Source: Basidiobolus meristosporus CBS 931.73
Taxonomy: Eukaryota > Fungi > Basidiobolomycota
Length of the DNA: 64,000 nucleotides
Direction: 5' to 3'
Assembly (NCBI GenBank): GCA_002104905.1
Contig: MCFE01000073.1
Coordinates: 121,180 to 185,179, forward strand
The notes under the pieces are model-generated. The model worked only from the letters and a program-made list of their open reading frames with translations. It ran no database searches and was not told the DNA's origin. A program made the translations under genes and the position numbers. Below, in pieces: positions 14,831 through 22,540 of this stretch (within the stretch, counting starts at the first letter, position 1; the number at the start of each line of letters is the position of its first letter).

Positions 14831-15973
14831 TTACAAATTACCACGCTCCTCTTGGCCACGCTCAATAGCCTCGAACAGCGACTTGAAGTTGCCAGCGCCG
14901 AATCCTTCGTGGTTCTTGCGCTGAATGAACTCCAAGAAGACTGTGGGTCTGTCCTCGACTGGCTTGGTGAAGATCTGCAACAAGTAGCCATTCTCGTCGT
15001 AGTCGACAAGGATGTGAAGCTTCTGGAGGATCTCCAAGTCTTCGGTGACCTGGGTGCGAGAGGTCTTGAGTCTCTCCTTGAGGTTGGCGTAGTACGAGCT
15101 TGGGATGGTGAGGAACTGGGCGCCACGAGCACGCAGGTTGCTCACGGCAGTGATGATGTCTGGGCAGTTGAGGGCAATGTGCTGGACTCCAGCTCCACCA
15201 TAGTACTCAACATACTCCTGGATCTGGCTCTTCTTCTTCCCGACTGCTGGCTCGTTGATTGGCATCTTGACCTTCTCGGTGTCATCGGCCATGACAATGG
15301 ACCGGAGGGCACTGTACTCGGTGTGGATCTGAGAGTCATCAACCGACCAGAAGCGATGGAATCCCAGCTGCTTCTCATACATCTCGCATGCCTCAACCAT
15401 CTCGCCATCCGGTTGGTTACCAACACAGTGGTCAATGTGGTTCAGTGGGACGGGTGGGAGCACATCCTCAAGGGGGTCTTGGTCGCGAGGAGTGCCATAG
15501 TTCGGGAGGAATGGGCCGGTGTAGTTCTTTCTCTCGATGAAGGTGTGCTCGGTGTCTCCATAAGTGGCAATGGTGGCCATGACAACTGTGCCATTCTCGT
15601 CGGTCTCCTCCCATGGTGCACGGATCGACTTGGCCCCATTCTTCATGGCGTGCTCGTACACCGCGCGAGCATCGTCCACGGTGAAGGCAACATCCTTGAT
15701 TCCGTCACCATGGACGGCCATGTGGTCGGCGAAGGCCTTGTTGTTGGGGTTGAGTGGCGATTGGAAGATGAAGGTCACCAAGTTGTTGCTGACAACGTGG
15801 GAGACGACATCTCTGTTGCCAGTCTCAAGGCCCTTGTAGGCGAGAGCTTTGAAGCCATAGCGCACGACATAGAAGGAGGCAGCTTGCTTAGCATTACCAA
15901 CCCAGAAGGTGATATGATCGAAACCGCGGTAGGTGGTAGGTTGTTGGGCGCCTTTGAATTCGTAGGAGGTCAT
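14831..15973 (-). CDS. HPD: 4-hydroxyphenylpyruvate dioxygenase, copy 1 (intronless)
   Basis: 380 aa with IDHCVGN, GVQHIAL and [40 protein letters not shown]. Confidence 0.96.
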
Positions 15974-16851
15974 TTGTTAAATCAGATAAAAAAGTATGAT
16001 AGATTTCTCTCGACGAGTCCAATGTTTAAATACTTCGACCTGGGTAACACCCTTTTACCACGGTGAAGTATATTCTCCACTCCAGCTGATACGTGGATCT
16101 AATTACTTATGGAAGTAATATGTTTCATATCGTCATGTGGTCACCTCAATTTGATTCATCAATAGCATTGGGTGTGATATGTTGATTTTAAAATTGGGAT
16201 CAATAACATGCGAATTTAGGCCCGGATTTTGGAGGCTCAGTACCCTAATTGCTGAAAATATTCACACCATGAAAGCCAAGCAAATTTTCAGGGCTCCGCA
16301 ATATTTGACAGTTGACTACGCCCACATACAATTCTTGCAGAAAAAATCTATTGATTCTAATGTAGTCTTAAATGCTTGCGCACACTGGCGACTCGTAGCC
16401 CTTAATTTAATATTGCTGATTTCTAATCAAGCAAGTGAGGTTTGAGTCAACTCAGTGGATTCATATTTCGAAACCCTTTTCTATCCTGCGCACAATACAT
16501 GCTTCTGTTGATGTAATACATACCCATATTGGATCATATTTTCTATAACAATCACTTTTGCTGATGAGCACGCCATTGAGGTATATCAGGGTATTCATGT
16601 TAAAAAAGATAAAGAATCCGAACTAATTGTTCTTGGTCATATTCTCGAAAGACCATTCAAATATTATGTTAAACAGTAATACAAGATCACTCATCAAGAT
16701 ACTTTCCTATTGTATTCAAGATGATAGCTGCTCACCTAGATTGTGTTATCTATTGTCTTTGTACCAAACTTGTAAAGTTTATCACATTTAGTTTATTTTA
16801 CAACTGTTCTTTGTAACGTTTTGAATGTTATGCTAAGGTTGCTATGTTAGT

Positions 16852-17994
16852 TTACAAGTTACCACGCTCCTCCTGGCCACGCTCAATAGCCTCGAACAGC
16901 GACTTGAAGTTGCCAGCGCCGAATCCTTCGTGGTTCTTGCGCTGAATGAACTCCAAGAAGACTGTGGGTCTGTCCTCGACTGGCTTGGTGAAGATCTGCA
17001 ACAAGTAGCCATTCTCGTCGTAGTCGACAAGGATGTGAAGCTTCTGGAGGATCTCCAAGTCTTCGGTGACCTGGGTGCGAGAGGTCTTGAGTCTCTCCTT
17101 GAGGTTGGCGTAGTACGAGCTTGGGATGGTGAGGAACTGGGCGCCACGAGCACGCAGGTTGCTCACGGCAGTGATGATGTCTGGGCAGTTGAGGGCAATG
17201 TGCTGGACTCCAGCTCCACCATAGTACTCAACATACTCCTGGATCTGGCTCTTCTTCTTCCCGACTGCTGGCTCGTTGATTGGCATCTTGACCTTCTCGG
17301 TGTCATCGGCCATGACAATGGACCGGAGGGCACTGTACTCGGTGTGGATCTGAGAGTCATCAACCGACCAGAAGCGATGGAATCCCAGCTGCTTCTCATA
17401 CATCTCGCATGCCTCAACCATCTCGCCATCCGGTTGGTTACCAACACAGTGGTCAATGTGGTTCAGTGGGACGGGCGGGAGCACATCCTCAAGGGGGTCT
17501 TGGTCGCGAGGAGTGCCATAGTTCGGGAGGAATGGACCGGTGTAGTTCTTTCTCTCGATGAAGGTGTGCTCGGTGTCTCCGTAGGTGGCAATGGTGGCCA
17601 TGACAACTGTGCCATTCTCATCGGTCTCCTCCCATGGTGCACGGATCGACTTGGCCCCATTCTTCATGGCGTGCTCGTACACCGCGCGAGCATCGTCCAC
17701 GGTGAAGGCAACATCCTTGATTCCGTCACCATGGACGGCCATGTGGTCGGCGAAGGCCTTGTTGTTGGGGTTGAGTGGCGATTGGAAGATGAAGGTCACC
17801 AAGTTGTTGCTGACAACGTGGGAGACGACATCTCTGTTGCCAGTCTCAAGGCCCTTGTAGGCGAGAGCTTTGAAGCCATAGCGCACGACATAGAAGGAGG
17901 CAGCTTGCTTAGCATTACCAACCCAGAAGGTGATATGATCGAAACCGCGGTAGGTGGTAGGTTGTTGGGCGCCTTTGAATTCGTAGGAGGTCAT
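16852..17994 (-). CDS. HPD: 4-hydroxyphenylpyruvate dioxygenase, copy 2
   Basis: Protein identical to copy 1 in the ORF track. Confidence 0.95.
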
Positions 17995-18872
17995 TTGTTA
18001 AATCAGATAAAAAAGTATGATAGATTTCTCTCGACGAGTCCAATGTTTAAATACTTCGACCTGGGTAACACCCTTTTACCACGGTGAAGTATATTCTCCA
18101 CTCCAGCTGATACGTGGATCTAATTACTTATGGAAGTAATATGTTTCATATCGTCATGTGGTCACCTCAATTTGATTCATCAATAGCATTGGGTGTGATA
18201 TGTTGATTTTAAAATTGGGATCAATAACATGCGAATTTAGGCCCGGATTTTGGAGGCTCAGTACCCTAATTGCTGAAAATATTCACACCATGAAAGCCAA
18301 GCAAATTTTCAGGGCTCCGCAATATTTGACAGTTGACTACGCCCACATACAATTCTTGCAGAAAAAATCTATTGATTCTAATGTAGTCTTAAATGCTTGC
18401 GCACACTGGCGACTCGTAGCCCTTAATTTAATATTGCTGATTTCTAATCAAGCAAGTGAGGTTTGAGTCAACTCAGTGGATTCATATTTCGAAACCCTTT
18501 TCTATCCTGCGCACAATACATGCTTCTGTTGATGTAATACATACCCATATTGGATCATATTTTCTATAACAATCACTTTTGCTGATGAGCACGCCATTGA
18601 GGTATATCAGGGTATTCATGTTAAAAAAGATAAAGAATCCGAACTAATTGTTCTTGGTCATATTCTCGAAAGACCATTCAAATATTATGTTAAACAGTAA
18701 TACAAGATCACTCATCAAGATACTTTCCTATTGTATTCAAGATGATAGCTGCTCACCTAGATTGTGTTATCTATTGTCTTTGTACCAAACTTGTAAAGTT
18801 TATCACATTTAGTTTATTTTACAACTGTTCTTTGTAACGTTTTGAATGTTATGCTAAGGTTGCTATGTTAGT

Positions 18873-21339: not shown

Positions 21340-21347
21340 TATATAAA
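21340..21347 (+). promoter_or_regulatory. Candidate TATA box of HPPD copy 4
   Basis: TATATAAA starting 58 bp upstream of the ATG at 21398. Confidence 0.5.
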
Positions 21348-21397
21348 CTCCTCAACTTCACCTCCAGCACTCATATTATTCCTTTCTTATTGTACCA

Positions 21398-22540
21398 ATG
21401 ACCTCCTACGAATTCAAAGGCGCCCAACAACCCACCACCTACCGCGGTTTCGATCATATCACCTTCTGGGTTGGTAATGCTAAGCAAGCTGCCTCCTTCT
21501 ATGTCGTGCGCTATGGCTTCAAAGCTCTCGCCTACAAGGGCCTTGAGACTGGCAACAGAGATGTCGTCTCCCACGTTGTCAGCAACAACTTGGTGACTTT
21601 CATCTTCCAATCGCCACTGAACCCCAACAACAAGGCCTTTGCCGACCACATGGCCGTCCATGGTGACGGAATCAAGGATGTTGCCTTCACCGTGGACGAT
21701 GCTCGCGCGGTGTACGAGCACGCCATGAAGAATGGGGCCAAGTCGATCCGTGCACCATGGGAGGAGACCGATGAGAATGGCACAGTTGTCATGGCCACCA
21801 TTGCCACCTACGGAGACACCGAGCACACCTTCATCGAAAGAAAGAACTACACCGGCCCATTCCTCCCGAACTATGGCACTCCTCGCGACCAAGACCCCCT
21901 TGAGGATGTGCTCCCACCCGTCCCACTGAACCACATTGACCACTGTGTTGGTAACCAACCGGATGGCGAGATGGTTGAGGCATGCGAGATGTATGAGAAG
22001 CAGCTGGGATTCCATCGCTTCTGGTCGGTTGATGACTCTCAGATCCACACCGAGTACAGTGCCCTCCGGTCCATTGTCATGGCCGATGACACCGAGAAGG
22101 TCAAGATGCCAATCAACGAGCCAGCAGTCGGGAAGAAGAAGAGCCAGATCCAGGAGTATGTTGAGTACTATGGTGGAGCTGGAGTCCAGCACATTGCCCT
22201 CAACTGCCCAGACATCATCACTGCCGTGAGCAACCTGCGTGCTCGTGGCGCCCAGTTCCTCACCATCCCAAGCTCGTACTACGCCAACCTCAAGGAGAGA
22301 CTCAAGACCTCTCGCACCCAGGTCACCGAAGACTTGGAGATCCTCCAGAAGCTTCACATCCTTGTCGACTACGACGAGAATGGCTACTTGTTGCAGATCT
22401 TCACCAAGCCAGTCGAGGACAGACCCACAGTCTTCTTGGAGTTCATTCAGCGCAAGAACCACGAAGGATTCGGCGCTGGCAACTTCAAGTCGCTGTTCGA
22501 GGCTATTGAGCGTGGCCAGGAGGAGCGTGGTAACTTGTAA
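21398..22540 (+). CDS. HPD: 4-hydroxyphenylpyruvate dioxygenase, copy 4 (inverted)
   Basis: Same 380-aa protein on the opposite strand, with unique flanks. Confidence 0.96.

What the first reader, a model, noticed from the sequence alone, without database searches (positions are those of the whole stretch)
14831..22540. Four protein-identical HPPD genes plus a fragment: strong dosage amplification of a normally single-copy catabolic enzyme
Seen: three tandem copies with a 2021-bp period, one inverted copy and a 5' fragment. All are intronless in an intron-rich genome and strongly biased to C-ending codons. Established: HPPD makes homogentisate, which auto-oxidises to pyomelanin if not removed by homogentisate dioxygenase, and HPPD is the target of triketone inhibitors. 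No downstream catabolic gene is in the window. Inference: selection for high homogentisate flux (pigment, redox or iron chemistry) or for inhibitor tolerance.
Basis: partly seen in the sequence, partly recalled or inferred. Interest (0 to 1): 0.75.

Follow-up and report, generated by a model that had tools for sequence, protein, structure and literature searches.

The report
Old, homogenised HPPD gene array
The gut-associated fungus Basidiobolus meristosporus carries four intact, protein-identical genes plus one broken remnant for the tyrosine-breakdown enzyme HPPD; the multi-copy locus also exists in B. ranarum and is kept uniform by gene conversion and selection, a clear but ordinary case of gene-dosage amplification.

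Summary
The window is Basidiobolus meristosporus CBS 931.73, contig MCFE01000073.1. It holds three tandem HPPD genes (period 2,021 bp), one inverted copy and a 335-nt 5' remnant. All four full copies encode the same 380-aa canonical 4-hydroxyphenylpyruvate dioxygenase. All 12 variable nucleotide sites among them are synonymous.

New here: the amplification is old, not recent. B. ranarum has the same layout, with tandem copies beside the PH-domain gene and one copy beside prephenate dehydratase. Yet copies cluster by species: dS is 0-0.04 within B. meristosporus, 0.53 within B. ranarum and about 1.35 between species. An AU test rejects the positional-orthology trees. Homology among the three promoter types stops at the ATG and the stop codon. 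This is concerted evolution by gene conversion under strong purifying selection (dN/dS about 0.03).

Codon bias (ENC 43 against 49-60 in neighbours; C-rich but not G-rich at four-fold sites) fits high expression.

Dosage amplification is supported. Its purpose (tyrosine/phenylalanine catabolic flux, homogentisate pigment or inhibitor tolerance) is untested. Intronlessness predates the array.

GenBank already annotates the four genes, but I found no paper describing the array. Unchecked earlier notes of this scan list several similar enzyme arrays on other DNA of this genome, so this is one member of a known kind.

The parts
14831..15973 (-). HPPD copy A: last member of the tandem array, tail-to-tail with the PH-domain gene. 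It is the positional orthologue of the full B. ranarum copy on L001.
   Evidence: It has 5 private synonymous sites.
16852..17994 (-). HPPD copy B
   Evidence: CDS identical to copy C.
18873..20015 (-). HPPD copy C. It keeps only 91 bp of the array-type promoter, with a TATA-like box at about -60, and lacks the conserved distal promoter block.
20107..20441 (-). Fragment F: CDS nt 1-335 of a former upstream array member. It has 1 mismatch to D and 5 to A/B/C. It joins position -91 of copy C bluntly, and its reading frame stops 3 codons past the junction.
21398..22540 (+). HPPD copy D: inverted, head-to-head with F, and 378 bp upstream of prephenate dehydratase. It is the positional orthologue of the B. 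ranarum copy on L002.
14826..20106 (-). Tandem array X-Y-X-Y-X. X is 1,239 bp, running from -91 to 5 bp past the stop. Y is the 782-bp spacer. The stretches Y1+B and Y2+C are 100% identical over 2,021 nt.
16065..16846 (-). Spacer Y1 (35% GC), found nowhere else in the window. It carries the distal part of the array-type promoter, including a block conserved with B. ranarum.
18086..18867 (-). Spacer Y2, identical to Y1.
20444..21397 (.). Divergent 954-bp intergenic region between F and D. It holds two unrelated promoters, each with a TATA-like box about 58-59 bp before its ATG.
22919..23845 (+). Intronless prephenate dehydratase (PDT + ACT domains) downstream of D. The adjacency is conserved in B. 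ranarum only.
12866..14257 (+). PH-domain gene that marks the conserved outer border of the tandem array.

Best explanation
This is a genuine, long-maintained multi-copy locus for canonical 4-hydroxyphenylpyruvate dioxygenase in Basidiobolus. An ancestor of B. meristosporus and B. ranarum already had tandem copies beside the PH-domain gene and an inverted copy beside prephenate dehydratase. Since then the coding sequences, but not the promoters or 3' flanks, have been repeatedly homogenised within each species by gene conversion. cDNA may have served as the donor, as proposed for highly expressed fungal duplicates. Unequal crossing-over between the 1.24-kb X units changes the number of array members, and B/C is the youngest product. 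A deletion of about 1.6 kb truncated the former first member into fragment F. Purifying selection keeps every copy encoding the same enzyme. The most likely benefit is higher enzyme dosage, delivered from at least three different promoters, for a high flux of tyrosine/phenylalanine breakdown in a fungus that lives on protein-rich gut and dung substrates. Shown: copy structure, enzyme identity, selection, shared layout and concerted evolution. Inferred: high expression, the dosage benefit and the physiological purpose.
For: Copies and identity. Enzyme identity: the TIGR01263 equivalog is met and the Fe-ligand positions align with human HPPD. Selection: 12 of 12 variable sites are synonymous, with P about 1e-8 if neutral; dN/dS is 0.015-0.035. 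Shared layout: L002 carries HPPD-PDT-UBQLN-COPE-AP-mu-TMEM208 as in the window. L001 carries a partial HPPD, a 771-bp spacer, a full HPPD and then the PH-gene C-terminus tail-to-tail (tblastn 78% over 32 aa, E 3e-11). The 3' flank of D against that of Br_syn gives z = 8, and the upstream of A against that of Br_tan gives z = 4, with a conserved block. Concerted evolution: dS is 0-0.04 within B. meristosporus, 0.53 within B. ranarum and 1.3-1.4 between species. The tree groups copies by species, and the AU test rejects the positional-orthologue clades (delta lnL about 200; p 0.007 and 0.025). Paralogue homology stops at the ATG and the stop codon, with flank z below 2. Expression proxy: ENC 43 against 49-60; at four-fold sites C is 0.52 but G only 0.12, which argues for codon preference rather than plain GC-biased conversion. 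Outgroups have a single HPPD at the locus. The assembly is PacBio. Precedents: CDS-limited conversion in fungal ribosomal-protein duplicates (PMC6993855) and the dosage-selected HMA4 triplication with ectopic conversion (PMC3749932).
Against: I examined no expression, read-depth or metabolite data. The B. ranarum evidence comes from two short-read contigs that break at the HPPD copies, so its array size and the link between its two loci are not seen directly. Gene conversion from a single selected copy could keep the others intact without each being needed. The copy numbers of the next enzymes (homogentisate dioxygenase and the rest) are unknown, so catabolic flux cannot be told apart from homogentisate overflow. 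Earlier unchecked notes say that tandem arrays are common in this genome, so part of the pattern may reflect a genome-wide tendency to make arrays rather than a demand specific to HPPD.
Confidence: 0.62

Rival explanations
1. Assembly artefact: one or two real genes were over-expanded by the assembler.
For: B and C, together with their spacers, are 100% identical over 2,021 nt. I could not examine read depth.
Against: A, B/C, D and F differ at fixed sites and have different flanks and junctions. The assembly is PacBio. An independent assembly of B. ranarum shows at least three distinct HPPD sequences and contig breaks at them. At most one unit (B or C) could be spurious.
Confidence: 0.05
2. 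Recent, independent duplications occurred in each species, with no long-term maintenance and no gene conversion. The near-identity simply reflects the youth of the copies.
For: Copies cluster by species. dS within B. meristosporus is only 0-0.04. The Y1+B and Y2+C units are identical, so at least one duplication is very recent.
Against: The same two positions and orientations are occupied in both species. A recent DNA-level duplication would carry flanking sequence, yet the X-type, D-type and F-type copies share nothing beyond the ATG and the stop codon. Retroposition would carry UTRs and a poly(A) tract, which are not seen.
Confidence: 0.1
3. The copies exist to overproduce homogentisate, for pyomelanin pigment or for extracellular redox or iron chemistry, rather than to complete tyrosine catabolism.
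For: No homogentisate dioxygenase or later gene lies in the window. In other microbes an excess of HPPD over homogentisate dioxygenase gives pyomelanin (papers listed, e.g. PMC3548413, PMC9338888).
Against: No paper links Basidiobolus to pyomelanin or homogentisate. The copy number of the downstream enzymes is unknown. Five related fungi likewise show no tyrosine-catabolism gene near HPPD, so the absence in this window says little.
Confidence: 0.15
4. The amplification gives tolerance to natural HPPD inhibitors (triketone-like compounds) by target overproduction.
For: Target-gene amplification is a known route to herbicide tolerance in plants, e.g. EPSPS (papers listed). All copies are identical, as a pure dosage mechanism would predict.
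Against: There is no evidence that this niche exposes the fungus to such inhibitors. The HPPD-resistance titles and abstracts listed, which I did not read in full, mention enhanced metabolism or expression rather than HPPD gene amplification. The locus is old and shared by two species.
Confidence: 0.04
5. The array is a neutral by-product of a genome that readily forms and homogenises tandem arrays. Only one copy is needed, and the others are kept intact by conversion.
For: Earlier unchecked notes list many enzyme arrays in this genome. One member has already decayed to a fragment.
Against: Multiple copies persist in two species separated by saturated dS. Strong codon bias suggests a demand for expression. 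There are three distinct promoters, each retaining a TATA-like box.
Confidence: 0.12

Closest known systems
Arabidopsis halleri HMA4 tandem triplication (PMC3749932)
   Same: Tandem copies of one gene are retained for product dosage. Recurrent ectopic gene conversion is confined to the coding sequences. Promoters are distinct, and paralogues within a genome are more alike than orthologues.
   Different: HMA4 is a plant metal pump for which expression and phenotype have been measured. Here the gene is a fungal catabolic enzyme, the locus has an extra inverted copy and a truncated member, and expression and phenotype are untested.
Concerted evolution of duplicated ribosomal-protein genes in fungi (PMC6993855)
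   Same: Only the CDS is homogenised while the flanks diverge, and the effect is associated with high expression. cDNA is proposed as the donor. The paper documents the effect in an early-diverging lineage (Rhizopus) as well as in yeasts.
   Different: Those are dispersed duplicates of translation genes. This is a local array of a metabolic enzyme, and there are no introns with which to test for a cDNA donor.
Canonical eukaryotic HPPD (human 5EC3, rat 1SQI; tyrosine catabolism step 2)
   Same: Full-length alignment with E of 1e-151 to 1e-157, the same two-barrel VOC architecture, conserved metal-ligand motifs and the same length.
   Different: The enzyme itself shows no detectable difference. 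The difference lies in gene copy number and organisation.
Aspergillus hppD/hmgA tyrosine-degradation cluster and pyomelanin (PMC3548413)
   Same: The same enzyme step. The balance between HPPD and homogentisate dioxygenase decides whether pigment forms.
   Different: From my own knowledge, Aspergillus has a single hppD clustered with hmgA, fahA and maiA. Here HPPD is multi-copy, the pathway genes are not clustered with it, and its neighbour is a biosynthetic prephenate dehydratase.
Other enzyme arrays noted by this scan in the same genome (subtilisin, PEPCK, GDH, GlcNAc-type transporter, PDC/ADH)
   Same: They are reported as old tandem arrays kept uniform by conversion and selection. Their functions fit growth on protein and chitin.
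   Different: I did not check them. The HPPD array is smaller and includes an inverted member.

Membership tests
4-hydroxyphenylpyruvate dioxygenase (TIGR01263 / EC 1.13.11.27) | Full-length match to the equivalog model above its curated cutoff | tested here: met
   459.2 bits against a cutoff of 277, covering model positions 2-353 of 353.
4-hydroxyphenylpyruvate dioxygenase (TIGR01263 / EC 1.13.11.27) | Two tandem VOC (glyoxalase-fold) domains, including the HPPD N-terminal domain | tested here: met
   Pfam Glyoxalase (2 stretches), Glyoxalase_4 and Glyoxalase_5 (HPPD N-terminal) all score above their cutoffs.
4-hydroxyphenylpyruvate dioxygenase (TIGR01263 / EC 1.13.11.27) | 2-His-1-carboxylate Fe(II) triad (human H183, H266, E349; these residue numbers are from my own knowledge) | tested here: met
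   In the alignment to human 5EC3, the query motifs IDH (H182), VQH (H265) and FLE (E348) match the human motifs column for column.
4-hydroxyphenylpyruvate dioxygenase (TIGR01263 / EC 1.13.11.27) | Catalytic conversion of 4-hydroxyphenylpyruvate to homogentisate | not testable with these tools
   This needs an enzyme assay. It is inferred from the end-to-end, near-gapless alignment to characterised animal HPPDs (E 1e-154 to 1e-157).
Dosage-selected gene array under concerted evolution | Several intact copies encoding the same product, under purifying selection | tested here: met
   Four identical proteins, 12 of 12 differences synonymous, dN/dS 0.015-0.035.
Dosage-selected gene array under concerted evolution | The gene tree contradicts positional orthology (paralogues within a species are closer than orthologues) | tested here: met
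   Shared layout, species-wise clades at 99/99 and 92/93, and rejection by the AU test at p 0.007 and 0.025.
Dosage-selected gene array under concerted evolution | Homogenised tracts bounded by diverged flanks | tested here: met
   Homology ends at the ATG and the stop codon among X-type, D-type and F-type copies, with flank z below 2.
Dosage-selected gene array under concerted evolution | Raised total expression or an enzyme level that matters for fitness | not testable with these tools
   Only a proxy is available: the strongest codon bias among the host genes of the window.

The most novel reading that the evidence does not exclude
HPPD and the adjacent prephenate dehydratase form a Basidiobolus-specific functional pair. 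The amplified HPPD draws on shikimate-pathway keto acids or on dietary tyrosine, and it produces large amounts of homogentisate (or 2-hydroxyphenylacetate from phenylpyruvate) as a secreted redox-active, iron-mobilising or pigment precursor used in the gut niche, rather than for catabolism. Several promoters would give condition-specific output.
Probability: 0.1. Interest if true: 0.65.

Novelty: new member of a known kind. Interest (0 to 1): 0.36.

Why it matters
HPPD is single-copy at the locus in all five related fungi I checked. A conserved, homogenised array with at least three intact copies therefore marks tyrosine/phenylalanine handling as a trait under unusual demand in Basidiobolus, a gut commensal of insect-eating amphibians and reptiles and an occasional human pathogen. 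Earlier notes of this scan, which I did not check, list protease, PEPCK, GDH and chitin-sugar transporter arrays in the same genome. Together with those, it points to a general strategy of meeting metabolic demand by copy number. It also offers a compact locus for studying gene conversion confined to coding sequences in an early-diverging fungus. HPPD has well-characterised inhibitors such as nitisinone, so the dosage idea can be tested directly.

Tried and rejected
1. Retroposition as the origin of the copies is rejected. Homology stops at the ATG and the stop codon, with no shared UTR and no poly(A) tract. The gene is already intronless in Neoconidiobolus and Entomophthora.

2. Horizontal transfer as the reason for intronlessness is rejected. 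The nearest relatives are all early-diverging fungi at 70-77% identity.

3. GC-biased gene conversion as the sole cause of the codon bias is unlikely. At four-fold sites C is 0.52 while G is 0.12.

4. I looked for a homogentisate dioxygenase query through gene neighbourhoods of HPPD in five fungi. None was adjacent, so the copy number of the downstream enzyme could not be determined. I ran no further search on it.

5. The spacer Y and the F-D intergenic region have no other copy in the window or in the fetched loci, so a transposable-element origin is not indicated.

6. Literature searches for Basidiobolus with HPPD, homogentisate or pyomelanin, and for HPPD tandem duplication in fungi, found nothing relevant.

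7. I did not search or fold the 387-aa public model that splices fragment F onto copy C as a joined sequence. I only aligned the database protein returned by the tool and inspected the splice sites.

8. I did not run structure prediction or the big representative search. The family assignment is unambiguous without them.
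Full report
**Observation**

The region holds four complete 380-codon ORFs at 14831-15973(-), 16852-17994(-), 18873-20015(-) and 21398-22540(+). I call them A, B, C and D.
- A direct repeat with a 2,021-bp period spans 14826-20106, which is two full units plus 1,239 bp.
- D is a 99% identical inverted arm.
- A 337-nt piece at 20107-20443 repeats the 5' end of the gene.
- The four proteins are identical. The CDSs differ at 12 positions in total, every one synonymous, and B and C are identical.
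- A tblastn search of the window finds no further relic, and the window has no N.

**What the gene is**

The protein matches the NCBIfam equivalog for 4-hydroxyphenylpyruvate dioxygenase over its whole length (459 bits, cutoff 277). It has the two VOC-fold domains, including the HPPD N-terminal domain. It aligns end to end with solved animal HPPDs, including human and rat, at E of 1e-151 to 1e-157. The motifs that carry the iron ligands in human HPPD (H183, H266, E349, from my own knowledge) are conserved as H182, H265 and E348. It is therefore an ordinary, presumably active HPPD.

**Whose genome it is**

An exact look-up places the protein on contig MCFE01000073.1 (185,179 bp) of Basidiobolus meristosporus CBS 931.73. 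Window position 1 is contig position 121,180, and the window ends at the contig end.
- The strain came from gecko dung and was sequenced with PacBio (PMC7466969).
- The public annotation already calls four HPPD genes here. Three are 380 aa.
- The fourth (ORY01159.1, 387 aa) starts at the fragment's ATG and is spliced onto copy C, duplicating seven residues. Canonical GT and AG dinucleotides exist at the modelled junction, but I saw no transcript evidence.

**Anatomy**

Read on the minus strand, the array is F(1-335) | X_C Y X_B Y X_A.
- X is 1,239 bp and runs from 91 bp upstream of the ATG to 5 bp past the stop. Y is a 782-bp AT-rich spacer found nowhere else in the window.
- The stretches Y1+B and Y2+C are 100% identical over 2,021 nt. 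A differs from B at 8 sites, all in or next to the CDS.
- Fragment F matches D with one mismatch and A/B/C with five.
- F ends bluntly after CDS nt 335 and continues directly into position -91 of copy C.
- The simplest history is that F was once the first member of a four-gene tandem array and lost its 3' part plus one spacer in a deletion of about 1.6 kb.
- F, D and A/B/C have three unrelated upstream regions (alignment z below 2 against shuffles). Each has a TATA-like box 58-60 bp before the ATG.
- Homology between the three copy types starts at the ATG and ends at the stop codon.

**Comparison with B. ranarum**

The closest database relatives are two B. ranarum proteins at 93-94% identity.
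- Contig L002 carries HPPD, PDT, ubiquilin, coatomer epsilon, AP-mu and TMEM208 in the same order and orientation as copy D and its neighbours. The contig ends 3 bp before the HPPD ATG.
- The 3.1-kb contig L001 begins inside the 3' end of one HPPD copy. It continues through a 771-bp spacer into a full copy, and it ends in the C-terminus of the PH-domain gene, tail-to-tail as for copy A in the window (tblastn 78% over 32 aa, E 3e-11).
- The partial copy is 97.4% identical to the full copy on L001 and 89% identical to the L002 copy, so B. ranarum has at least three distinct copies.
- The 3' flank of D is homologous to that of the L002 copy (z = 8). The upstream region of A shares a conserved distal block with the L001 copy (z = 4).
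- Both positions, and the tandem arrangement, therefore predate the split of the two species.

**Concerted evolution**

Despite this positional orthology, the copies group by species.
- Synonymous divergence is 0-0.04 among the B. meristosporus copies, 0.53 between the two full B. ranarum copies, and 1.3-1.4 (saturated) between species.
- A maximum-likelihood tree rooted with Neoconidiobolus and Entomophthora gives species clades at 99/99 and 92/93.
- Forcing D with its B. ranarum positional orthologue, or A/B/C with theirs, costs about 200 log-likelihood units and is rejected by the AU test (p 0.007 and 0.025).
- With the CDS-limited homology, this is the signature of recurrent gene conversion.
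- The same pattern, with cDNA proposed as the donor for highly expressed genes, is described for fungal ribosomal-protein duplicates (PMC6993855). It is also described for the dosage-selected HMA4 triplication of Arabidopsis halleri (PMC3749932).
- There are no introns here, so the cDNA-donor version cannot be tested.

**Selection and expression proxies**

Twelve synonymous changes out of twelve have a probability of about 1e-8 under neutrality, using the synonymous-site fraction without weighting. dN/dS is 0.015 within B. ranarum and about 0.03 between species.

HPPD has the strongest codon bias among the host genes of the window: ENC 43 against 49-60, and GC3 0.72 against 0.44-0.59. At four-fold sites C is 0.52 but G only 0.12, while G is preferred at Lys, Glu and Gln codons. 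This looks like codon preference rather than plain GC-biased conversion, and it fits a highly expressed gene. That last step is inference.

**Context**

Five related fungi (Neoconidiobolus, Entomophthora, Thamnocephalis, Mortierella, Spizellomyces) show one HPPD at the locus, with no second copy and no PDT among the called genes within 4-10 kb. The gene is intronless in the two Entomophthoromycotina, so intron loss is older than the array.

The rest of the window encodes PFK2, DCP2, the PH-domain protein, PDT, ubiquilin, COPE, AP-mu, TMEM208, Spb1, a GH72 glucanosyltransferase, a sulfatase and LINE elements. It holds no homogentisate dioxygenase, fumarylacetoacetase or isomerase.

Earlier notes of this scan, which I did not check, list several other enzyme arrays on other DNA of this genome: subtilisin, PEPCK, glutamate dehydrogenase, a GlcNAc-type transporter and PDC/ADH. 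Some are described as old and homogenised. If they hold, HPPD is one member of a genome-wide habit, and its function fits a theme of living on protein and chitin.

**Interpretation**

The structural and evolutionary part is well supported: the copies are real, the locus is old, and it is kept uniform by conversion and selection.

A dosage benefit is the most economical reason for keeping several identical copies with different promoters over such a time span. I favour high tyrosine/phenylalanine catabolic flux. HPPD-dependent tyrosine disposal is known to be critical for animals on very protein-rich meals (PMC7837477 and PMC12315382, listed). The pigment or redox reading and the inhibitor-tolerance reading remain possible, but nothing here speaks for them. 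I found no paper linking Basidiobolus to HPPD, homogentisate or pyomelanin.

The assembly-artefact rival is largely excluded by the sequence differences between copies, the PacBio origin of the assembly and the second species. Only the B/C unit could be over-counted.

**Verdict**

This is a new member of a known kind, a dosage-type gene array under concerted evolution. The genes are already annotated in GenBank, but the array is apparently not described in the literature I could search. Interest is moderate to low.

Noticed in passing
window 18873-20441 (-): The public gene model ORY01159.1 (387 aa) joins the fragment's first 86 codons to codon 80 of copy C through a GT-AG 'intron', which duplicates seven residues. 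It is either a model artefact or a sign that the fragment's promoter drives a read-through transcript into copy C.
   Followed up: partly
window 21398-23845 and L002:4-2420: HPPD copy D lies 378 bp upstream of an intronless prephenate dehydratase (PDT + ACT) on the same strand. The pair is conserved in B. ranarum but absent in five other early-diverging fungi.
   Followed up: partly
window about 16113-16163 (and the identical stretch in Y2); L001 about 800-860: A conserved distal promoter block, with a GGTGACC core and CATGAAAC about 20 nt further on, lies roughly 140-190 bp upstream of copies A and B. It is shared with the B. ranarum tandem copy. Copy C lacks it.
   Followed up: partly
window 20442-20541, 21298-21397, 15974-16073: Three otherwise unrelated HPPD promoters each keep a TATA-like box 58-60 bp before the ATG.
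   Followed up: partly
window 57514-61817 and 63700-64000: A LINE-type reverse-transcriptase ORF (917 aa, RVT_1) lies near the contig end, followed by a tandem repeat with a unit of roughly 100 nt. No run of three or more TTAGGG units occurs anywhere in the window. The HPPD locus lies about 41-49 kb from this contig end.
   Followed up: no
L001 and L002 (B. ranarum GCA_040143965.1): Both B. ranarum contigs break at or inside an HPPD copy, as expected if the short-read assembly collapsed a multi-copy locus. The true copy number in that species is unknown.
   Followed up: partly
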